Assembly (NCBI GenBank): GCA_965235115.1
Contig: OZ249445.1
Coordinates: 20,150,001 to 20,214,000 of the forward strand
Direction of reading: 5' to 3'
DNA length: 64,000 nucleotides
From: Laetmonice hystrix
Lineage: Eukaryota
Made by a program: the position numbers and the translations under genes. Position 1 is the first letter of the stretch. Every line of letters begins with the position of its first letter. Below, piece after piece: positions 4,401 to 58,900 of this stretch. The notes under the pieces are model-generated. The model saw only the letters and a program-made list of their open reading frames with translations. It ran no database searches and was not told where the DNA came from.

Positions 4401-5203
4401 TGTGTCGTGTCAGCCGGACCGAACCAATCTGACCGAACTCTCTGTCAACCCCCAAACTGGCCGACCGCCGCTAGCCGACTGGCCACTACTATAGTGAGGT
4501 TTTGGACTTATACGTGTTGGTACAAACGCTCCGCCGATAATCTAGGTCAGATCTATCTGATTCAAAGCCAGGCTGTTTTTGCAATCATGCCGTCCACTTG
4601 TGCTCCTGATCCGACCCACATCTTAGGTTAACACATACAATATGTAGATCATACTTAGGCCTACTTGTTCAACAGCTTTATCAAAATACATCAATAATGT
4701 AATAAAAAAAATGGACCCAAAGGCCGGGTATAATAAATTGTACTCTAATCTCCTTAGAGAACGTCACAAGCTTATCAAAAATTAAAAACCTCAATGGTAA
4801 ATAACAGCTTTTCTCACTGGCATGAACCATTTATTTTAAAATGCATGTTAATATATTATATTATTATGTTGCAATAAAAACAAAGCATGAACACTAGATC
4901 ATGTACGTTTCAAGGATACACTGCGCAATTGGTCCCCAGATGGATTAAAATGAGCGGGAACCCTGTAAATGCACTTTGTCACTTCATTTAATAATATACC
5001 ACAGTCATAGACCAATGAGAGCATTAGGGATAGGCATTTTCTTCTTCGTTCATGTCGTCAATGGCCAGTAATAATAATCAATCATCTAAATTTTCTACAA
5101 CCACTCTCATATCTAAACACACTACTGAAAAAAACTAGCCATCCCTAGGTTTTTATAAGACCCCAGTGTGATAACGGTAGTAAGTGTCATTGCGCGTCTC
5201 CGA

Positions 5204-7558
5204 CTACTCCCACTCGAGGTCTAAGATTCCGTACTTGTCGCACAGTTTGTACAGACGCATTGTGGCGGCGAGGTTATCAAGGGAAAGTTGTATGACGTCA
5301 CTGTCCATGTCGGCCATAGTCAGCAATTCCTCGCGTGGGAACCCGAACGCTTCCGACAGGGCCAACGTGGAGTGACGTTCTGAGTGCAGAAATCAAGCAC
5401 AACTAACATTTAATGGGAAATATCATGCATTTTTCCTTCCTTTTAAATATAATTATTATTCCTATTATTAGCATAAGAATACATTGGCCCAATATGTAAA
5501 AAACCCAGCTAGCCTTCGTTCGTAGAGAGCTCAAATCTGTGGTCAAGTGGAAGAAGTAATTCTACCTGACAACAGCTTAGCAGCGTCCTCTGCTTCCCCT
5601 TTTACCGGAAAGTGAACGTTGCGTTCTTTCCAGACTTTTTCCACGAACTCATTCCGAGAGGCGCGATCCTGAAGGTTCTCCAGGAAGGCGCGCGTCTCTC
5701 CGGCGTCTGTGTTGTCCAGGGGGGTTAAAGGGTAGTCAGTAGTGTCCATCCACGTCAACAGTTCCATGGCCATCTCACCGACCTGGTCAGGGTGTGATCA
5801 GATCCGTCACAATCTACTATTGGCAGACGACCCATGGCGAAAAATGTCAAGACAACGGAAGCAAAAGCCTTCTTCTTTCGGTATCGTCGTGGGGATTACA
5901 AAAGGTTTGACATTAGCATTGGCAGATCGAGTGTCGTGAAAGTGTTTTGGGGACTTCGGATTCCCTAGTGCATTGCCTAGACAAAGAAGGGTCTACTCGC
6001 CTCAAACATGACATCGAGGCTTCCGTTGACTCGTGCCTCGTTGACGAAGCTGTCGACAAAGTCATCCATGGGTGAGAAAGGGATGCCCAGCATCCGCGAG
6101 AGGAAAGTCAGACTGGGCGAATCTTCACATCAACACATACACACAGCATTTTTAAACGGGTACTTTAATTATACTTGCCATCATTAGTTTTACGATCACT
6201 TAATCACTGTAAATATATGGAGGGCTTATTACCTTAATTGCTATGTTAAACAAGGAAACCAGAAGTTGGCCAGATATTTTCGTGGTGTTGAATATTTACT
6301 GATTTGCATGATACTATTTACAGTATTCCATTATTTCGCTCATTCTCCATTTACCTGCTATTCCCAACTTTTACAGTATTTCACTGAAATCTTGAAAAGG
6401 TGACTAATTTTGCCTGAAAATAACCCCCCCCCCTCAAAAAAAAAAATCCAAACCATTGCATCGCTTCCTTCAACTGACTGTCTTCATTAACGTTTCTCTC
6501 CTTAAGTTGAATATGTGTGTGCTACTCACGGCAGACCATTGTAGCGAGTTCTCCCTGCTGTCCGGGATCAAACAGGTCCAAATGGAGGCTGTGACCCAGG
6601 TCAACCAGTCCCTGTCGTGTCGCGCCGCGATCTTCGCCCGCCTCCAACAGCCACAACAAGTAGTTGTGATCCTGGCCAACAGTACCGGGGTCGTCAGGTA
6701 TAGACATTGGAAGACATAGGTAAGGTTGTGCCTTGACTCGAGGTACACACAAGGACATGGGGAGGTGTCGTTAAAAGTGGTCTCAATGAGGAAATACTGA
6801 TCTAGCAAATGGTATCTCGACCAGGAAATGATCTTTCCTGGTAAGGTCGTTTGTAATCACTCAAAAATCAACCAGAAAATTAGAACCACAGGTTTATAGA
6901 TGAACCCGATAGATTTCAATATTAGAGAGATAGAGAAATAAAGGACCGCTGCCTGTCTTAAGTGAACCTGAGAGATTTCAATATTAGAGAGATAGAGAAA
7001 TAAAGGACCGTTGCCTGTCTTAACCGAACCTGATAGATTTCAATATTAGAGATATCATGAAATAAAGAACTGTTGCCTGTCTCAATAAACCTGATAGATT
7101 TCAATATTTGAGATATCGTTAAATAAAGGACTGTTGTTACCTTGGTTTTGGAGACGAAGCGGCTGAACGCCTGGGCTAGTTTCTCATCACAGTCCTCACC
7201 ATTGTGTGGCCGCCCCCCTGTGGTACAAGAGGCGGGGGGGGGGGGGGGGAAGGGGGGTTAACTCTGTTCACTTCACCAACACGCACGTTCAAATTACACA
7301 CACTATCCTCTCCCATGACATCTATCTCTATGTCATAATCAGTTTTTTTTACAACAGGCATCAGAAGAATCAAGCACCTGACAAAATATGATTGGCCTCA
7401 ACACATCGGTATCAAAGCTTCAATGATACCTTATCATCTGCCACTTTACTTTTGTACCACTCTGTATATCTCTGTCGTATACAAGCTGTGAAAAACTTAC
7501 CTGAGGAAAGAAAATATCCACAAAAGAAAAACACGAAACAGGTTTGCGTGGTCCACAT
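5204..7558 (-). CDS. Uncharacterised secreted protein, paralog A (263 aa, 6 coding exons)
   Basis: Exons 7501-7558 (MWTTQTCFVFFFCGYFLSS, signal-like), 7141-7217, 6530-6671, 6001-6122, 5566-5782, 5204-5379. Total 792 nt, phases 1,0,1,0,1, open to TAG. Colinear homology with paralog B supports every exon. Intron 4 has a GC donor. Minus-strand AATAAA at 4830-4835. Confidence 0.8.
6900..7135. repeat. Minisatellite ~62 bp x ~4 in intron 2 of paralog A
   Basis: Unit gatagatttcaatattagagagatagagaaataaaggaccgctgcctgtcttaagtgaacct starting near 6908, 6970, 7032 and 7093. Confidence 0.9.
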
Positions 7559-8836
7559 TGATAGTGCTCCCTGGGCGGTCGCAAGGATATGGCCAGTGTC
7601 TCCTACCACGCCACATATGTCCCGTTAGGTCACGATCTTCAAACTGGGACCCTAGCCAACCGCTTTCATTCCATTTAATTGTAGACAATCACTAAATCCG
7701 GGTGCAACTCTTCCATGACCTCCATTTTTTTTAATAGGGGAATTAACATTAAAGCTTACTCAGGTCATTAGTATATTGTCAATAGGGGGAGATACGCAAC
7801 ACTCCTGTTTGGTTTTGTCATCCATAATAAAGACTATGCTGTTAGGCCACGGTAATATTAAAGTTTACTTTTAACAATTTGGAAGAGAAATGTATGTATG
7901 AGCCTAAGTTAATATATAGTCCCGCTTATATGTATACACATATACGTATGTACGTAGGTAGGTCGGTCAAGTAGGTAGGTAAGTAGGCAGGTAGGTAAGT
8001 AGATATGCCTAATGCATGAGGCCATATAGCTTAAGTATGCCTTAGAAACTTGGATACCAGGCGTAGGTGTGGAGTGTGTAAATGTAATAATATAATAATT
8101 CTGTTTATTTGCTATTGGATAGCTAACGTTGCTATGTACAGTGTTGTCTTTGTACAGGTCCTGTTCATAGCATCATTTCTACATGCCATTGATCTATGAT
8201 TAAATCCGTGCAGTATATCCTGACTGCAGCGCGAGACGTTCACAAACGGGTAATGTCTCCATGTCCATATACTTGCACGCATGTCACATACGTATTCCTT
8301 TTCGTCATTCCCTCGGTAACGATTACGTTCAAAAGACACTTGAAGTCTCTTTGAGCCTTCCCAATTCATGAATAGGTTCAGAATCCACAAAAGAAGCACG
8401 CTTCAGTGGTTTCTTTAAAAAAATCAGTAAGAATTTTGCAGTACCTAAAGATCTCACCCCAGCAAGTTGTAGATCGATCTCAGTGATTTCTATACATTAC
8501 ATATAGCCTGACCAGGGTGGATATACAGCAGGCATGTTTCTATTATATTCCCGTGAGGGAACTAGGGTATATGACTTCCCCATCATTGATATATATCCAG
8601 GCGGTGTATGTGTATAAAGTTTCCCCTCACTAGGACAATACATGAAATATTGATATGTAAAAATGGTAGAAACACTTCAAAGTTTATACTTCAAAATGTG
8701 TCATCTTATGAATCAGTCCAGAGTAGTATCTATCTATGAAAGTCAACAGGACAAATCAAACATCCCACTTTAACACCATTAATCTATTCGGCCCACCTTA
8801 TTTCTACAGTGTTCAATCAATAAATGTGTATCCCGG

Positions 8837-10864
8837 TTACTGTAAATCTAGAAGACCCAGTTTTTCAGCCACCCTGTAGAGCCGCAAGGCGGCGCGCACC
8901 CCCCGGATGTGACGTGCGATCCGCCGAGGGCGCATGTCCTTGGCGAACGCCCTCAGCCACACCTCGGGGATCTGGAGCCGGTCGGACAGTTGCTTCAGCG
9001 AGTCTGCCTCTGAAAACACGGAAAGTACGATAGACAATATGAGACCAGAAATATGTCCTGGAAGTCATGATAATGGGTGATTCTTTACTGGGTACTAAAC
9101 AACGTACTAAACAAAAAAGGCGTATTTGCTTTACTGTTGCAGCTTATACAATCTATATTTCCAAGATTCGCACATTCCCAAGGCCTATAACTTTGCTAAA
9201 AGAAACAAACTCGTAAATCAAATTTCGTTACCTGTTAACACCTTTGCCACAAACGCCGGTTCGTAGGCCAGCGGGAACAACTCTTCCCGTAACGCGATAC
9301 GAACGCGCGGGTCTGACGTCAGTTCTTCCTGGACGTGTTCTAGAAACTTCTCCGTCTCCCGTCTCCCAGCATGCTGTAGTGGGGCCACTGGATATCCGGT
9401 TTGGAGAGTCCACTCTAACAGTTCGATGGCGATTTGTCCCACCTACATCATGGAAAACGGCGCATGATATTTATATACAGAGGCAATAAACCAACAGCAG
9501 AATAATGATATTACGAAATGTATGGCGACAGGTCTCTTTCTCTACGTGGTACCGGTATGTAGGCCCAGCTCATTCGGTAAAAACAGGGGTGGGTTGGTGG
9601 TTTTTACGTCCTGTCACTAAATGTTGGCTTTCTTCAGGACTTTGTCATTTTCTCTCTCCGGTGATGATAAAGGACTAGGAGAACCCTTTCCTTACACACC
9701 CGGCCTTTGAAACCCCATTAGGCAGAACTGGGCGAGAAGGCGGTGCCAACAGCATGGTCAATTGTAAGGCCAATCGAAAAATAGTTGTTTTTTTTTTCGT
9801 TTAACACAAATTACGACTTCAGTTGGGGATATTATCTTCATATTGACCTTTACCAACTATGATGAACTGAATCTGTCAAGAAATGTTTTAGACGTTCTGA
9901 CTTCTCAAAGCGCGACCCTACCTTTTTGAACGACCGCAGTCGGCCATATGTTTTCACTGGGAGAATATAATCTTCGTAAAACTGGTCCACTTGAAGAATA
10001 TCAACCCGCAGCGTGTAGGAAAGGAAGGCACGACTTCTCGAATCTGGAACACATTAAACCAATCGCATTTGTCCGTAAACAAGGGGCGACAGACCACCAG
10101 GCCCCCTACTGCGGCCCACAGTGTTTTGATCTTTACGTTGTGCATAAGCTCACTTGGTAACACCAGCGTTATTTCCTATATGTAGGATTACAGCAGAAAA
10201 TATTTCTAACACAGAATTAGGGAATTCAGAATTAACAATAATGAAAAGGAAACAAAATATATGTGTGAAATAAAGTGCCCATACGTACGGCAGAGTTTCT
10301 GAGCCAGTTTCTTGACATCGTTTGGATTGTGAAGGTCAAAGCCAATGTAAGCGCCCAAGTTGTCTATCGTTCTTCGGTTGACTGGGTGTGGAAGGTCCAT
10401 TACATTCAGCAGATAGTTGCGGGTTTTGCAGGTTTTAACAAACTTCACCATGGCATACTCAAGTTTTTGACAGTCCTTGTTCACCCGGCTATCTAATAAC
10501 ATATAAATGGAAACGAACATGGCCACCTTCCCAACCTTAGGTGACTTTGGAAATGGGAAACGAGCTATGGAAAGTTGACACCAGGAATGCACAGAAGCAA
10601 AGTATACACATACATGGGTATCTGTAACGGAGAGGCGCAGCCCCCCCCCCCCCCCCAACACACACACACTCCGACTTTTTGGTATTAGACCTTTTCCTTG
10701 TTTACAGTTCCCCCCCCCCCTCCCCCACCTTGAGCAATCCCTGACATACATATTACACACTACGATATATGTAATCAGACAGACCACTTACCTGGTTGCC
10801 AGGTGTAAGAGACCGACACCCCACAAAGGATACAGGTTGCATACAACCAAAGCCGCCCGTCCAT
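8837..10864 (-). CDS. Uncharacterised secreted protein, paralog B (260 aa, 5 coding exons)
   Basis: Exons 10792-10864 (MDGRLWLYATCILCGVSVSYTWQP, signal-like), 10289-10492, 9922-10043, 9232-9442, 8837-9009. Total 783 nt, GT-AG introns, open to TAA. Its 122-nt exon matches the 122-nt exon of paralog A, and both start ATTCG. An upstream acceptor at 10564 is an in-frame alternative. Confidence 0.82.
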
Positions 10865-13533
10865 TTCTTTCACATTTCATGAAAACAATGGTTTAATGAC
10901 GACACAGGATCAGAACCTCCCCGACCACAGTTCCAGGATCTGACCGACCTTGCATGCCGCGGGCTCTCTGCCAGCCGAACTGTGTGTGTCTATTAGAGAA
11001 ATAATTACACAAAAACTGGTGCTGGTCTGTAACAGGCCTACTAATACTTAATACGTGCAATGTTTAGGTTGTATTTCATGACGTCTAGGCGAATGGTGAT
11101 GAACCAGTCGTTTACTGTCGATCTTTAATTACCAGTTAGAAGTCATTATTTGAACGAGTCATTTCGTCACCGACACAGCGTTGACTTTGGGATCGAGTTC
11201 ACTGCTCGGCTTTCAGAGCGTCAAAAAGGCAGCAACTGTGACAACTTTTTCTTTATTCGAGAGAAAAGGTTGAAAAATGCAGTGTATTAAGATATTTATT
11301 AAAACTTATCGATGTATACTAAGGGTGAACGATAGAAAAGCAAACAAAAACTGAACCAGAAACTAAACGTAACTACTTAAATCAGGCAAATATGGACTAG
11401 TACGCTTAACAACATTCAGGAAAACTTGTACACTAAAACGCCGTCTGAATGGGGTTCACCACTTCCCTTTCATGGACTTTTTTTCAAGGGTTAGGTCTAA
11501 TACAATCTTGATGTAATATTAATAAATTAAAAGAAATTGAATAAATAAAATATAAACAAAACGAAACATAAATACTTAAATCTATAGATGTGTAATTTCA
11601 CCCTTTATTTCTTCTTTTCATTTGAACCTTTATACATGTGACGTTCCAGGTTTGTGAAAAGCCGTTGGGTACGACAATCGACAGCCTCGTTCTGGCCACG
11701 CCTCGCGGCCTGCAGCTCCACCTGGCGAGACCGACATGACGGTCGATCCTTCAGGTCGATTGCTGCCTCATAGTGCACATGTATAATCGTCAGTTATTGC
11801 ACATAAGACATAACAACAGATAGAAACCTCAACGCACGGAGCATGTATACATGTTGTGACCCAAAAATAAAATCACGATTCTGGTCTGTGACTCGGGTCT
11901 CATTTTTAGTTTCATGAGCCAAAATCATTTCATGACCTGCCGCTAAACCTCCTGGTAAGGGCTCCTAGACCAACTAAAGTCTATGCGTCTACGTGCTGCA
12001 TTCTCACTGAATGTTGGTTGCACGCAACTGTTGGTTGCACAGATTAAGTTTGTGCTGATGTGTGCACGCACCACTTACAAACACTGACGTGCCTGTTAGT
12101 CGACGTCCGGCGCTGAGATCACCAATTTACGCAAAACCTCGCTGGGTTTCGATAACTACCGAAAATAAGGAACATGAATGAAGGCAAAGCCCGCAATCCC
12201 GATTTTAAAGAGAGTAAGCCGCTCGCATTTGGATGTCAGGTGACAGGGTCCAGCAATCTATGACGTCACGAGTTGTAGACTCTGGTCATTCTCACAAAAT
12301 CAGACATCTACTAGCGCTGCGCTCACAACCGACTTCCCATGCGCAGCAACTCAATTTGTTGAAAAGGTATAAACCAAATTAAAAGATAGGCCTACATATA
12401 TAAAGAGAATAGAGGGAGTGACGTCACTTTGTGCCTACAATCAATTTAAGAAAGTTGTGGGATCGCGGTAGAACCAGTAAATTTACTTTTAATAACCCCC
12501 CCCCCCCCCCCGCCTAAAAAAATGAAAACTCTTAATTCCATGTTATGACTGACTATTCCCCGAACAAGTCCAAGTATATAATCTCTCGCATACAGACACG
12601 TGCGCACACAATCTCGCCAACTAGGGCTACAATATATGAATATATGTGTACATAATATTATAATAAAACAAAACGAAAAAATCGACAATTGATCGGACAT
12701 GAACATTTGAGGCGGTACATACAAGATACCTGGGAATGCGTGGCTCAGACACAGACACAGACAGTTAACACTGATGCTAACTACGCATTGGATGCGTTCT
12801 GTTCTAAAACAGAACACGTCAAGATAACAATCGATTGATTCGACTAACACAGCAATGTACAGCAGGGGGAAGTTTAAACCAGCCAAACTGACGGTACCTC
12901 AATAGTACCCTAACATTTGGTCCAATATTATCTGAGAACACCTTAGTCTGTCTTGGGTCGATGATGCCTCACAATTAAGCACACACATGCCCCGGTACCG
13001 CCACAGAAAACCTGAACCACTAAATATCGTAGCGCCATCGCTCAGGGCATCCACTGCAGTAAACATTTTGTCTTTTGTTTTTTTTTTACAATAGGCGTAC
13101 AAGAGGCTATATTAAGGCACAAAGGTTGAAGACTTCTGAAGGCCATTCAATCTACCAAGGAAATCCTACTTAACTCGTAATGCCAGCCTGCTGTGCAGGA
13201 TTACTCTTCTTTTATTATAATTAATCACTAAAGGGGAACTATATATCCGAGTTATAATGTTAGAAATAATAATAATCATCTCGTATAGAAAATGCATATT
13301 TATCTTGCTATGACCAGACATCAACAATATGTGTTTATAAATCTCATTATACCCCCCCCCCACCCCACCCCACCATTCAAGGCCACTTGGTGCTCCCTAC
13401 ATGCCTGGTAACGCGTTCCCGTACACGAGTTCGCGTCACATATACATAATTGTTTTTATCGACACTCCCTCATTTCTACCACTCTCAATTTACAAAAGTG
13501 TACCATAATTCCTACCATTCAGAACACACTGGC

Positions 13534-15132: not shown

Positions 15133-50066
<34,934 letters not shown>

Positions 50067-54758: not shown

Positions 54759-55915
54759 ACTAAAACAGCTCCTATGGCGACTCCACACATCGGCTAACAA
54801 ACTAAAACAGCTCCTCTACTGTCTTACTAAAACAGCTCCTATGGCGACTCCACACCTCGGCTAACAAACTAAAACAGCTCCTCTACTGTCTTACTAAAAC
54901 AGCTCCTATGGCGACTCCACACCTCGGCTAACAAACTAAAACAGCTCCTCTAGTGTCTTTACTAAAACCGTTTCTTTGGCAACCCCAACCCTCCGTTAAC
55001 AATTAATCTAAAACAGCTCCCCTGGTGTATTTACTAAAACAGCTTCTATGGTGACTACAGACTAGAACAGCTCCTCTGCTGACTCTATAAACTGCCCGAT
55101 CCAACAGCTTCCCCTGTCAATTAAAACCCAGGGAGACACAGCTAAAACAGCTCCACTGATCACTCGAGACAATAGCAACCATCAGAACTAGAAGAGCTCC
55201 ACTCCTGACGTCGCACATCTGAGACAGTGCGAGTGACGCTGTTCTAGACCTTGGCTGACAAATCTTCAGTAACCCCAAAGATTGATGACTTCCAATATAT
55301 GGTGTCAAACGGGACAGTCGACTGCCCAACAGCTCACCTAAGAATTAGGTGAGAGACACTTGCACATCCTAAAACAGCTAACTAATTTACACACTGGTTA
55401 ACAGACTAAAACAGCTTCTCTAAGAGATTCACACCCTGGCCAACAGACTAAAACAGCTTCTCTGAGAGATTCACACACTGGCCAACAGACTAAACAGCTT
55501 CTCAGAGAGATTCACACACTGGCCAACAGACTAAACAGCTTCTCAGAGAGATTCACACACTGGCCAACAGACTAAACAGCTTCTCAGAGATTCACACACT
55601 GGCCAACAGACTAAACAGCTTCTCAGAGATTCACACACTGGCCAACAGACTAAAACAGCTTCTCTGAGAGATTTACACACTGGCCAACAGACTAAAACAG
55701 CTACTCTGAGAGATTCAAACACTGGCCAACAGACTAAAACGGCTTCTATGAGAGATTCACACACTGGCCAACAGACTAAAACAGCTACTCTGAGAGATTC
55801 AAACACTGGCCAACAGACTAAAACGGCTTCTATGAGAGATTCACACACTGGCCAACAGACTAAAACAGCTTCTCTGAGAGATTCACACACTGGCCAACAG
55901 ACTAAAACAACTTCA
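54759..55915. repeat. Compound minisatellite built on CTAAAACAGCT (67-bp x3, degenerate middle, 39/42-bp x ~12)
   Basis: 67-bp unit at 54761, 54828 and 54895; ggccaacagactaaaacagcttctctgagagattcacacact units from ~55430 to 55910. Confidence 0.9.
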
Positions 55916-58900
55916 TCCAGGACTTCAGGCACTGTTCAAAATACTAAAATAGCTTCATTGATCATTCAAATCAACAGCTTATGAATATATCTCCTATGTG
56001 GCTTTAGACCCTGAACAGCATACATTACTCGAACACTCATGCGAAGGTTCTAGCCAGTCTAGGCACCAGCTCACTGAAACTTGTCCACAGTAAACTCCAA
56101 AAACATGCCCCCCTAGCTCATATAGAACTGGTCTAGTTAACCTTGGTAACGAATATCCACAGGCCAACACCTAACGAGGTATCCTACCTCTGAGGCATCA
56201 TAAACTTGGAGGCAATTCACCTGCATACTTATCCAGTATCATCAGTTAATGAATTTTTAAAACATTCTACTGACTTGTGGCTACACTTTTAGCAGGTTTG
56301 AATTCTACCCTCTTAACCCCCCCCCCCCCCCCCCCCCCCAACAACAATATACGATGTTGGTTTTGAACATGAGCGTGCAACATAAGGTTCGGCCAATGGG
56401 AGAAGGGGTGCCACTGGCTGAAATGGCCGACAAAATACCTAGGGGCAATTACCCCCCCCCCCCCTTCCTGAGGGGCACAGGAGTCTGGGAAGCACACAGG
56501 CCATCTCCGTGTACTTTACGGGGAAGGGGACACAATCCGACCCTATCGGCGTCTCACACGAGCACCGACGAGATCAAAGATTCCTCAATTGTTGCCTTTT
56601 TTCTACAACATGTAACAACATATTCCTGCACGCTATGTTTGCACTACATTCTCTACCCGAACCAACCCTCCACAAGTAACCCTACTGTCTCCTGCCCTGG
56701 GCACACCTAGTCACAAGTGACCGTCCGGTAACCCCAGGTGACAGACTGACGTGAGCATGTTGTCAGGAATGTGTCAAGGTGACACAGCCAAACACTGAAC
56801 CGATCATAATGATGTCATAATAAGGTAATAACGCCAGGGCAGCCATCTTTCTACCGGCCACCAATGCAACTTTTACATATTCATCATCTGGAAAAGGTCT
56901 TTTTTCATATCAAACTCCATCTATGTTTTTTTATGAATACAAACTTATCATAGTTTCTTATTTAATTGCCAGCGACGTTTGGTCGCTGTGCTACTTTGGC
57001 AATAAATTGAACTGTTGAGAAAGTTGTTCGTTATAGCACTTCCTGAACGTATATTTCCACCAGAACAATTGAACAAATAAGCAGACTATAACGATATCAA
57101 TTTTCATATTTCGTTGAGCAAAAGCAACCTGATACGGTGATACCCAAAGAATGACGGCAGAAAAAAACGTATTAAATGGGAGAGAAAAAACCCGGAACAA
57201 GTGGGAAAGCTGCCAGGAAACAGATGCTATGGAAAGTAAATGTAAGTTGTACGTTACATGTGATGGTAGTTGATGATTCTGAAGCTATCCATCTCGAGAT
57301 GATGATGGGAACACATCCTTGCTTACTCCTTCACCTTGTCAAAACGTTCAAGCATGCTACTCAATCCTCAAGTGTATCGCTCTCCTCTCCGCGTCCACAA
57401 TCAGGTTCGTCTCTATAATTTATAGAGATTCTCTAACCGGTGCAGAGTTGGCCTCGGTAGTCTCTCTCGCTCCCCCTCTCTCTCTCTCCCTCTCTCTATC
57501 CAACAAAATTATCCGAAGGGCCACTTTTAACTGCAGTCTCCTCTTAGATGGATGCGTCCATAAATCTGAACCCCCACGTCTCTAGATGCAGAGATTCGCT
57601 TCTTGATTTACGAGTTAGACAATGGGTTCATTTCTGTCTGAGTCTGAGTGTTGGATGCCTGCTGGGAACTTGACCGCTCCGTGAAGGTTAGGGCGGGGAC
57701 GGGGCAGTGAACTGGTCACCTCACCTTTGACCTCTAGGGAGCACCAATCACAGACGGCATGCACGCATGTTGCGACCTGGTTGCGACAGCCTCTAAACTA
57801 TGCCAATAACCAGGATGTATTGGAATGCTGCAGTGATGATGAAGGGCATTGGTGGTATTAATTTTTTGTCTAAAAGTCATCACCAAAGGTTACATCCTGG
57901 AATTGGAATTGGAAAGAAGGAAATTTAAACAATTACAGAATACCTCCTTTTAGATTAAAACGCTGGCTGGGTTTACAAACAATATTTACTTATTTTTTCA
58001 AGCGAAAAAAGGCCTGATGCGGAAGGGGCAACATTTGGTACTGATTACCCTCCTTTACCCACGCTGTTATATTGGCCTCTGCCCTTGCCGTGTATCATCA
58101 CTTTCTCCAGTTCCTAAATTGATACATTTGACTATTCACGCCTCACTGTAGCTCCGGTCACTTCAGACAAATCAAGGGCACTACTACCTGCACCACTTGT
58201 AAATTGCCTCGTGTTTTTTTGTCAGCCCGCTGGGGGCCACACTTGTTTCACCAGTGTGACATACAATATCTGTTTCCACCAGAACGGAGTGGCACTGCCC
58301 GGTACATCCTCGCAACTCGCCAGGCTCACAGCCACGTGGGCTGGGCTGATTTACAAAACATGGCCGTGGAATTCTTCAGATTCTTACCAGCCTCTACATA
58401 TGGCTTCAGAAACTTCATGGGCTCCGTTCGGAACCCGTAACCACGTTTGAGCCACTCCTGGGTAGTTTCGGGCAATTGCAAGCCAAATGAGCTCGATGTG
58501 TCTCTCCGACTAGGAACCAACTGTCTGCCTGTAGGTCATCTACAAACCATTAATTTTGGCTCAACTTTCTACGCCAGGTCTGGCTGTGCACCAGTCTCTG
58601 AGAAGTCTGCAGGTCTCTGATGAAATGCTCCGGGGCAAAATTAGCTCCTCCTCTTTTGGCTTTGATGTCGACAACGAATGTATTGTCAAAGCTCCGTGAG
58701 AAAGGAACTTGTAATGAACTCTGCGCTCTGTTATTAAAATACAAGCACGGCTTGCAAAACGCTACTTTCTGATAACATTGAAGAACATAAGCAGGACATA
58801 AAACTTTTCGTTTACCAAACTCTGCGCTCTGTTGTTAAGGAAGAGCCTAAAGCAAACGTTTGGAGGTGTGTTGTCAAACTGTGCAAGCTCTCTGAATCGC

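What the first reader, a model, noticed from the sequence alone, without database searches (positions are those of the whole stretch)
5204..10864. Tandem pair of unassigned ~260-aa secreted helical proteins hidden between a P450 and MYRF
Hand-splicing gives two complete, open, signal-peptide-bearing genes that the ORF track shows only as fragments. They are clearly homologous (DC..KL..A...FV, NYLL, LG..I..DL..P, FLS..L, VG..A.ELL.W...YP..PL......ET..FLE, RLY...K.G.LDL) but deeply diverged: 10/40 identities in one exon and 18/38 in the best block. Splice phases and the 122-nt exon length are shared. Intact frames despite this divergence imply long-term selection. I recognise no enzyme, lectin, toxin or hormone motif. 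Two Cys residues (EDC/KDC and MVC/KLC) are conserved, suggesting a disulfide. This is the best candidate for an undescribed system in the window.
Basis: partly seen in the sequence, partly recalled or inferred. Interest (0 to 1): 0.82.

Follow-up and report, generated by a model that had tools for sequence, protein, structure and literature searches.

The report
Undescribed secreted worm protein pair
Two neighbouring, transcribed genes of this annelid-type worm encode related ~260-residue proteins with signal peptides, one strongly acidic and one strongly basic, from a small family with no detectable match to any described protein; their function is unknown.

Summary
On the minus strand lie gene A (6 exons, 263 aa) and gene B (5 exons, 260 aa). 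They are 32% identical (BLASTP E 1e-39). They share intron phases, a 122-nt exon and two cysteines.

Run X4 carries intron-less contigs of both genes, so it behaves like RNA. Eight of the nine junctions are confirmed to the base, including a GC-AG intron. The first junction of gene A was not reported.

No known family matched: exon-wise Pfam, PDB sequence profiles and ESM Atlas features all gave nothing. A profile search of 1.84 billion proteins found four exon-sized fragments from other samples, two of each type.

New here:
- A third, distant member (gene C) on contig C8 keeps three intron positions and both cysteines.
- An internal two-fold repeat has moderate support.
- Net charge is opposite and type-specific: A has pI 4.5 (net -23), B has pI 9.5 (net +11). 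The fragmentary relatives show the same split.
- No polar residue is invariant, which argues against an enzyme.

Best reading: a lineage-restricted, non-enzymatic, secreted helical family. A and B may work as an acid/base pair, but that is inferred only.

The parts
7501..7558 (-). Gene A exon 1 (CDS part): ATG at 7558 and a signal-peptide-like hydrophobic N-terminus. It ends in phase 1. The 5'UTR reaches at least about 7582.
   Evidence: model. (in-frame stop 22 codons upstream). (hydropathy). (X4 depth over 7454-7645). The 7501|7217 joint itself was not among the rows shown.
7141..7217 (-). Gene A exon 2 (77 nt): start of module N1 with the first conserved Cys (C29).
   Evidence: Joint 6671|7141 in X4 contig 25.
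6530..6671 (-). Gene A exon 3 (142 nt): rest of module N1, ending at the second conserved Cys (C92), phase 1.
   Evidence: Acceptor corrected from 6731 to 6671 by alignment to gene B. Confirmed by X4 joints 6671|7141 and 6122|6530.
6001..6122 (-). Gene A exon 4 (122 nt): module N2. It is followed by a GC-AG intron (5783-6000).
   Evidence: donor GAG|GCGAGT. X4 joint skipping 218 nt, for which only the GC..AG placement is canonical.
5566..5782 (-). Gene A exon 5 (217 nt): module C1, the best conserved part (W, YP..PL and FL motifs).
   Evidence: alignments. (AF2: four helices, pLDDT 57). (joints).
5204..5379 (-). Gene A exon 6: module C2 and the stop codon (5204-5206). In this type the exposed face of its amphipathic helix is acidic.
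   Evidence: Joint 5379|5566.
4829..5203 (-). Gene A 3'UTR, with an AATAAA at 4835-4830.
   Evidence: X4 contig 25 extends 321 nt below 5150. PolyA signal.
10792..10864 (-). Gene B exon 1 (CDS part): ATG at 10864 and a signal-peptide-like N-terminus, phase 1. The 5'UTR reaches at least about 10944 and holds two short upstream ATGs.
   Evidence: Joint 10492|10792 in X4 contig 26.
10289..10492 (-). Gene B exon 2 (204 nt): whole module N1 with C32 and C92. It is the most polymorphic exon.
   Evidence: (AF2: four helices, pLDDT 64). (six differences between haplotypes, four amino-acid changes among those listed).
9922..10043 (-). Gene B exon 3 (122 nt): module N2.
   Evidence: Joints 10043|10289 and 9442|9922.
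9232..9442 (-). Gene B exon 4 (211 nt): module C1.
   Evidence: Joints.
8837..9009 (-). Gene B exon 5: module C2 and the stop codon. In this type the same helix face is Arg-rich.
   Evidence: Joint 9009|9232.
8229..8836 (-). Gene B 3'UTR (about 608 nt).
   Evidence: X4 contig 26 starts at 8229.

Best explanation
Shown:
- Genes A and B are real, transcribed, correctly spliced tandem paralogues.
- They belong to a small, taxonomically restricted family. This genome has three members: A and B here, and C on contig C8.
- Each protein is a signal-peptide-like N-terminus followed by two related modules of about 113-130 residues. Each module is split at the same place by a phase-1 intron.
- The first module carries two conserved cysteines.

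Inferred:
- The proteins enter the secretory pathway and fold into an all-helical two-lobed body. One disulfide (C29/C32 to C92) clamps the first lobe.
- They are not enzymes. The only invariant residues are hydrophobic or structural (W, Y, P, L, F, G), plus one Ser. They therefore more likely act by binding something, or as an extracellular structural component.
- The duplication that gave A and B is old, and each type has kept its own charge. A-type is acidic and B-type is basic. The sharpest switch sits on the exposed face of one amphipathic helix in module C2.
- My preferred mechanism is that A and B are made together and associate as an acid/base heterodimer derived from an ancestral homodimer. 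The target (a ligand, or a matrix such as mucus, cuticle or tube) is unknown.
For: - Transcription and splicing: intron-less contigs in X4, depth 87 (A) and 163 (B), in the same data set.
- Homology of A and B: E 1e-39.
- Gene C: BLASTP to B E 2e-10; hmmsearch against the A+B profile 1.9e-11; three shared phase-1 intron positions; both cysteines kept.
- Family size: profiles that include C find only A, B and C in the genome.
- Relatives elsewhere: only four exon-sized ORFs among 1.84 billion proteins, two B-type and two A-type. Exon order and boundaries are conserved in L003 and L005.
- Purifying selection: pS 0.68-1.0 (saturated) against pN 0.26-0.44.
- Signal-peptide-like N-termini, with no other hydrophobic span.
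- Helices: four in N1 of B and four in C1 of A.
- Internal repeat: hhalign of the N-half against the C-half gives score 26.9, P 5.6e-4. Columns 55-94 of both halves align in register across the phase-1 intron. The score beats 150 of 150 column shuffles.
- Charge: A has pI 4.5, net -23; B has pI 9.5, net +11. The C-half of A-type L005 is -8.8 and that of B-type L003 is +9.9.
- The C2 helix is Arg-rich in both B-type sequences and acidic or neutral in both A-type sequences.
- No invariant polar or catalytic-type residues apart from one Ser.
Against: - No whole-protein structure could be predicted. The exon models have low confidence (pLDDT 57-64).
- The one complex job, four exon pieces of B, gave no answer.
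- Binding of A to B was never tested.
- Secretion was not tested with a dedicated predictor or with proteomics.
- The tissue behind X4 is unknown, so 'made together' means only 'in the same RNA-type data set'.
- Gene C is mildly acidic (pI 5.1) and unpaired, so members can presumably work alone.
- Opposite charge between paralogues can also arise from different targets.
- Support for the N1-C1 part of the internal repeat is weak. The signal sits in about 40 columns around the intron.
Confidence: 0.5

Rival explanations
1. The proteins are very remote members of a described helical extracellular fold (for example a saposin-like, secretoglobin-like, insect-allergen-repeat-like or other lipid-binding helical bundle). 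Exon-by-exon sequence searches simply cannot see this.
For: All homology searches had to use pieces of 25-115 residues, which costs sensitivity. Small helical modules often turn out to share known topologies. The fragment models were too poor for a meaningful fold search (all E > 3).
Against: Gene C's contiguous 115-149-residue exon also finds nothing in Pfam, PDB or the Atlas. The cysteine pattern (two conserved) does not fit saposins, which have six. ESMFold2 gave pLDDT of about 40 on all four pieces, as is usual for sequences unlike anything it has learned.
Confidence: 0.3
2. A and B act separately on different targets. The basic B binds polyanions or microbial membranes, in a defence-type role. 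The acidic A binds cations or a basic matrix. The opposite charge reflects subfunctionalisation, not partnership.
For: The charge difference is conserved by type. B's first module is unusually polymorphic, with four amino-acid differences between the two haplotypes in 67 residues, as is often seen in defence-related genes. Gene C exists without a neighbouring partner.
Against: A and B have stayed adjacent and in the same orientation, and both occur in the one RNA-type data set at similar depth. The charge switch is concentrated on the same helix of both proteins. That pattern is what one expects for a symmetric interface turned heterotypic.
Confidence: 0.25
3. The hydrophobic N-terminus is an uncleaved signal anchor or an ER/organelle targeting signal. 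The proteins would then be membrane-tethered or lumenal residents rather than secreted.
For: Cleavage was not predicted with a dedicated tool. A's N-terminal region has no positive charge.
Against: The hydrophobic stretch is short (about 11-14 residues) and is followed by small residues (SSG in A, SVS in B), as in cleaved signal peptides. Neither protein has a KDEL-type C-terminus.
Confidence: 0.1
4. The open frames are chance or decaying sequences without protein function.
For: None beyond the lack of any annotated homologue.
Against: Spliced transcripts exist. Frames are intact and intron positions conserved in three paralogues and in other samples. Synonymous sites are saturated while protein motifs are conserved.
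Confidence: 0.02

Closest known systems
Secretoglobin pairs (androgen-binding protein alpha/beta-gamma genes, Fel d 1 chains 1 and 2). Comparison from general knowledge, not from a match.
   Same: They are small helical secreted proteins encoded by adjacent paralogous genes. Their products join, with disulfides, into a heterodimer that holds a ligand.
   Different: Secretoglobin chains are about 70-90 residues with one four-helix unit. A and B are about 240 residues with two modules. No sequence match was found in Pfam or PDB. A-B binding is untested.
Insect allergen repeat (Bla g 1 type, Pfam Ins_allergen_rp). Comparison from general knowledge.
   Same: It is a secreted all-helical protein built from an internally duplicated module of about 100 residues. 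The two copies together form one lipid-holding body.
   Different: No Pfam hit on any exon. The lineage differs (insects versus annelid-type worm). The conserved motifs and the cysteine pair are not those of that family.
Other orphan secreted proteins of this same genome (scan note s1-342760).
   Same: It is also a lineage-restricted, spliced, signal-peptide-bearing helical protein without database relatives.
   Different: That one is described as cysteine-free, coiled-coil and cut at furin-type sites. A, B and C have a conserved cysteine pair, globular-type hydrophobic motifs and no conserved dibasic sites. I did not compare the sequences.
Leg1 / C6orf58 family (Pfam PF05612), the genes next to paralogue C.
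   Same: It is a secreted animal protein family of poorly known function. Two copies lie 2-8 kb downstream of gene C.
   Different: There is no sequence relation: hmmsearch finds no hit and hhalign gives probability 0.15%. The link is neighbourhood only.

Membership tests
Any Pfam-A family | Score above the family's gathering cut-off | tested here: not met
   Twenty exon pieces or ORFs of A, B, C and relatives were scanned. The best was Rrf2 at E 0.0033, 18 bits against a cut-off of 30, on one exon of B only. It was absent from the B-type orthologue L003 and from A. The search was exon-wise only, because the spliced protein has no reference.
Any protein with a solved structure (by sequence) | Significant hmmsearch or phmmer match to a PDB chain | tested here: not met
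   Profiles of N1, N2, C1 and C2 and gene C's 115-residue exon were searched. The best E-values were 0.026-1.1, on unrelated proteins.
Any known fold (by structure) | Confident structural neighbour of a confident model | tested here: inconclusive
   Only two single-exon models could be made (pLDDT 57 and 64). Foldseek against AFDB clusters gave E > 3. The whole protein was not foldable with these tools.
Saposin-like proteins | Six cysteines forming three disulfides in a module of about 80 residues | tested here: not met
   Only two cysteines are conserved across A, B and C, both in the first module. The second module has none conserved.
EF-hand calcium-binding proteins | Conserved 12-residue Asp/Glu loop (DxDxDG...E) | tested here: not met
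   An acidic stretch in C2 of A (DMDSD...) is replaced by DMRPRR... in B. There is no Pfam EF-hand hit.
Helix-turn-helix DNA-binding domains (Rrf2, HTH_19) | Reproducible profile match across family members, in a nuclear or cytoplasmic protein | tested here: not met
   Weak hits on single exons (E 0.003 and 0.04) were not reproduced in orthologues. The proteins carry signal-peptide-like N-termini.
Leg1 (PF05612) | Match to the Leg1 profile, or to the Leg1 genes next to paralogue C | tested here: not met
   No Pfam Leg1 hit on any exon. hmmsearch and hhalign of the A/B/C profile against the two Leg1 genes gave no hit.
Heterodimeric secreted paralogue pair (functional kind, not a sequence family) | Physical association of the two gene products | not testable with these tools
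   Full-length chains cannot be handed to complex prediction. The one job, on four exon pieces of B, returned 'no answer'. Only indirect support exists: adjacency, presence in one RNA-type data set and type-specific opposite charge.

The most novel reading that the evidence does not exclude
A and B are the two subunits of an obligate acid/base heterodimer with a previously unseen extracellular helical fold. The fold is built from an internally duplicated module of about 115 residues. The family arose in annelids or their near relatives and serves a lineage-specific extracellular task, such as carrying a hydrophobic ligand or organising mucus, cuticle or tube matrix.
Probability: 0.2. Interest if true: 0.6.

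Novelty: categorically new. Interest (0 to 1): 0.45.

Why it matters
If the reading holds, this is a conserved, expressed animal protein family that no database describes. It has a clear modular history: a module duplicated inside the gene, then the gene duplicated, then the two copies took opposite charges. That makes it a tidy case for studying how a homodimer may become a heterodimer, and how lineage-restricted secreted proteins arise.

The value is limited for now. No function, tissue or fold is known, and invertebrate genomes hold many such orphan secreted proteins; another was already noted in this genome. 'New' applies here to the family. The fold may still prove familiar once the full-length protein is modelled.

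Tried and rejected
**Searches that found nothing**
- Exon-wise Pfam scans: nothing. The weak Rrf2 and HTH hits were rejected because they did not recur in orthologues.
- PDB profile searches: nothing.
- ESM Atlas by features on exon C1 of A and on gene C's 149-residue ORF: nothing usable.
- The search for homologous proteins: exon N1 of B had no candidate. The C2 profile had none scoring. The C1 profile returned only the same fragments.
- Foldseek on the two low-confidence exon models: meaningless, E > 3.
- Paper searches for the sample accessions and for conserved peptide motifs: nothing relevant.

**Tests with no verdict**
- Complex prediction with the four exon-encoded pieces of B as chains: 'no answer', pLDDT about 40. 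This is not evidence either way.
- Two searches for RNA runs listed no run on record as RNA. X4, of unknown kind, nevertheless proved to hold the spliced forms.

**Models and ideas dropped**
- My first model of A exon 3 (acceptor at 6731, 283 aa) was replaced by 6671.
- Pairwise Smith-Waterman of the N-half against the C-half was not significant. Only profile comparison shows the repeat.
- Synteny of relatives: L005 (20 kb) shares nothing with the window beyond the family exons. Its N-terminal exons could not be placed.
- A relation to the Leg1 genes next to gene C was rejected.
- A DDxxD motif in N2 of A and an EF-hand-like stretch in C2 of A are not conserved in B or in relatives.

- The spliced full-length proteins were never sent to any search or folding tool.
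- Gene C's signal-peptide exon was not found.
Full report
**1. What is in the sequence**

Reading the minus strand of 5204-10864 gives two genes.

- Gene B lies upstream. Its CDS exons are 10864-10792, 10492-10289, 10043-9922, 9442-9232 and 9009-8837, giving 260 aa.
- Gene A lies downstream. Its CDS exons are 7558-7501, 7217-7141, 6671-6530, 6122-6001, 5782-5566 and 5379-5204, giving 263 aa.
- My first model of A used an AAG acceptor at 6731 and gave 283 aa, with a 20-residue insert that B lacks.
- A CAG acceptor at 6671 removes the insert. It is preceded by a CTGAC branch-point-like site and a pyrimidine tract.
- All introns are GT-AG, except the intron after the 122-nt exon of A, which is GC-AG (GAG|GCGAGT).
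- Both ATGs are preceded by in-frame stops.
- A and B are 32% identical, BLASTP E 1e-39.
The splice phases are shared and two cysteines are conserved (A C29/C92, B C32/C92).

**2. Transcription and splicing**

- No run is on record as RNA.
- When the four runs of the source sample were laid on the stretch, three (X1-X3) held only the unspliced genomic form.
- The small run X4 held two intron-less contigs.
- Contig 25 (1190 nt, word depth 87) joins 5379|5566, 5782|6001, 6122|6530 and 6671|7141. It runs about 321 nt past 5150, to about 4829, just beyond an AATAAA at 4835.
- Contig 26 (1471 nt, depth 163) joins 9009|9232, 9442|9922, 10043|10289 and 10492|10792. It starts at 8229, which gives a 3'UTR of about 608 nt.
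- The 218-nt skip in A can be placed canonically only as GC..AG.
- The genome holds no intron-less copy of either gene. X4 therefore behaves as an RNA data set, and both genes are transcribed and spliced as modelled.
- The exon 1|2 joint of A was not among the rows shown, although X4 depth covers exon 1.

**3. Context**

All genes here are on the minus strand. P450 exons lie at 302-1579. A MYRF_ICA exon lies at 26927-27019.

**4. Relatives**

- The exon-wise search of the own genome first found only A and B.
- A two-sequence profile of module C1 was searched by HMMER against 1.84 billion representative proteins. It found four proteins, all exon-sized ORFs called on genomic contigs of other samples.
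- P0001 and P0002 are B-type. P0003 and P0004 are A-type.
- Locus L003 carries the last two B-type exons. L005 carries three consecutive A-type exons. L004 carries one A-type exon. Order, boundaries and phases match the window's genes.
- Synonymous sites between the window and these loci are saturated (pS 0.68-1.0), while pN is 0.26-0.44. The frames have therefore been kept by selection over a long time.
- Metagenome scans and word-based protein searches added nothing.
- Notes of other agents on this genome call it an annelid-type worm. I did not test that.

**5. A third member**

- A six-sequence C1 profile gave a weak extra hit on contig C8 (E 0.3).
- Reading that locus shows a colinear gene on the minus strand, which I call gene C.
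- It has an N1 exon (C8:14282250-14282050), one exon that fuses N2 and C1 (14281655-14281308), and a C2 exon from 14281081 to the stop.
- The phase-1 introns before N1, between N1 and N2, and between C1 and C2 sit at the same places as in A and B. The phase-0 intron between N2 and C1 is absent.
- Both cysteines are kept.
- BLASTP of C against B gives 25% identity over 193 residues, E 2e-10. hmmsearch against the A+B profile gives 1.9e-11.
- Its signal-peptide exon was not found.
- Profiles that include C find only A, B and C in the 627-Mb genome.

**6. Architecture**

- Each protein has a hydrophobic N-terminus of about 20-24 residues, the only hydrophobic span. Two halves follow.
- Each half consists of a piece of about 70 residues (N1 or C1), a phase-1 intron, and a piece of 40-57 residues (N2 or C2).
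- Pairwise comparison of the halves is not significant.
- Profile-profile comparison does show the repeat. With A, B and C in the N-half and five sequences in the C-half, hhalign aligns columns 55-94 of both halves in register across the intron. The score is 26.9, P 5.6e-4, above all 150 column shuffles (mean 10.7, sd 2.1; earlier versions).
- I read this as moderate support for the internal two-fold repeat proposed in scan note s1-349287. The signal is concentrated around the intron. N1 against C1 alone is not supported.
- AlphaFold2 on the two pieces that have references gives four helices each: N1 of B at pLDDT 64 and C1 of A at pLDDT 57. 'Helical' is supported for those parts only, and weakly.

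**7. Comparison with known families**

- Pfam scans gave nothing above noise on the pieces and ORFs of A, B, C and their relatives.
- The same holds for PDB profile searches, ESM Atlas features and Foldseek on the fragment models.
- The weak Rrf2 and HTH hits did not recur in orthologues.
- The Leg1 genes next to gene C are unrelated.
- All these tests were exon-wise. A remote relation to a known fold therefore stays open.

**8. Clues to function**

- The columns invariant across the family are W, Y, P, L, F and G, plus one Ser. No set of polar residues suggests catalysis.
- A is strongly acidic (pI 4.5, net -23) and B is basic (pI 9.5, net +11).
- The same split holds in the fragmentary relatives. 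The C-half of A-type L005 is -8.8 and that of B-type L003 is +9.9.
- The sharpest switch is on one amphipathic helix of C2. Both B-type sequences carry an Arg-rich face there (RPRRIARHIRG, RPRKIAHYIRT). The A-type sequences carry DSDVIQLSLDN and DDSMLYQYLTN.
- Both genes are adjacent, co-oriented and present at similar depth in X4.
- From this I infer that A and B are partners. The likeliest form is a heterodimer in which equivalent helices face each other, as would follow from an ancestral homodimer. This is inference only.
- The single complex job, on exon pieces of B, gave no answer.
- B's first module differs at four residues between the two haplotypes of the sequenced animal, while A's listed differences are synonymous. 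This fits either relaxed constraint or diversifying pressure on that part.

**9. Verdict**

The observation and most of the interpretation are confirmed. The finding is an undescribed, lineage-restricted family of signal-peptide-bearing, probably helical two-module proteins, with a conserved acid/base paralogue pair.

It is new as a family. Whether it is new as a fold or as a 'system' is not known. Interest is moderate, because orphan secreted proteins are common in such genomes. The charge-complementary pair and the clean duplication history make this one a testable case.

Noticed in passing
window 5783-6000 (minus strand): A GC-AG intron follows the 122-nt exon of gene A. It is confirmed by the intron-less contig of X4. 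Gene B has a normal GT donor at the homologous site.
   Followed up: yes
window 6901-7136: A 62-nt tandem repeat, 3.8 copies at 88% match, lies inside intron 2 of gene A.
   Followed up: no
window 10289-10492 (gene B exon 2): The two haplotypes of the sequenced animal differ at six bases here. Among the sites listed there are four amino-acid changes (M39L, H60R, F76L, N80S). The listed differences in gene A (V119V, L17L) are synonymous.
   Followed up: partly
window 10865-10944 (gene B 5'UTR): Two out-of-frame upstream ATGs lie 16 and 11 nt before the start codon.
   Followed up: no
G000:C8:14280893-14282250 (L011), minus strand: A third, distant paralogue (gene C) of the family. It keeps the phase-1 introns but has lost the phase-0 intron. 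Its first exon was not found and its expression is unknown.
   Followed up: partly
L009:6506-7606 and L009:1052-2137, minus strand (G000:C8, about 14.272-14.279 Mb): Two nearly identical intron-less genes of about 365 residues belong to the Leg1 family (PF05612, E 1.4e-46). They lie in tandem 2-8 kb downstream of gene C and are unrelated in sequence to A, B and C.
   Followed up: partly
G000:C8 about 14283591-14284430, and window 55543-55965: A minisatellite of about 840 nt lies upstream of gene C. It gives weak tblastx matches (26-30% identity, E down to 2e-5) to a repeat array in the window at about 55.6-56.0 kb.
   Followed up: no
window 7230-7260 and 10636-10720: Long G or C homopolymer runs sit in introns of A and B. 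Logan contigs break there.
   Followed up: no
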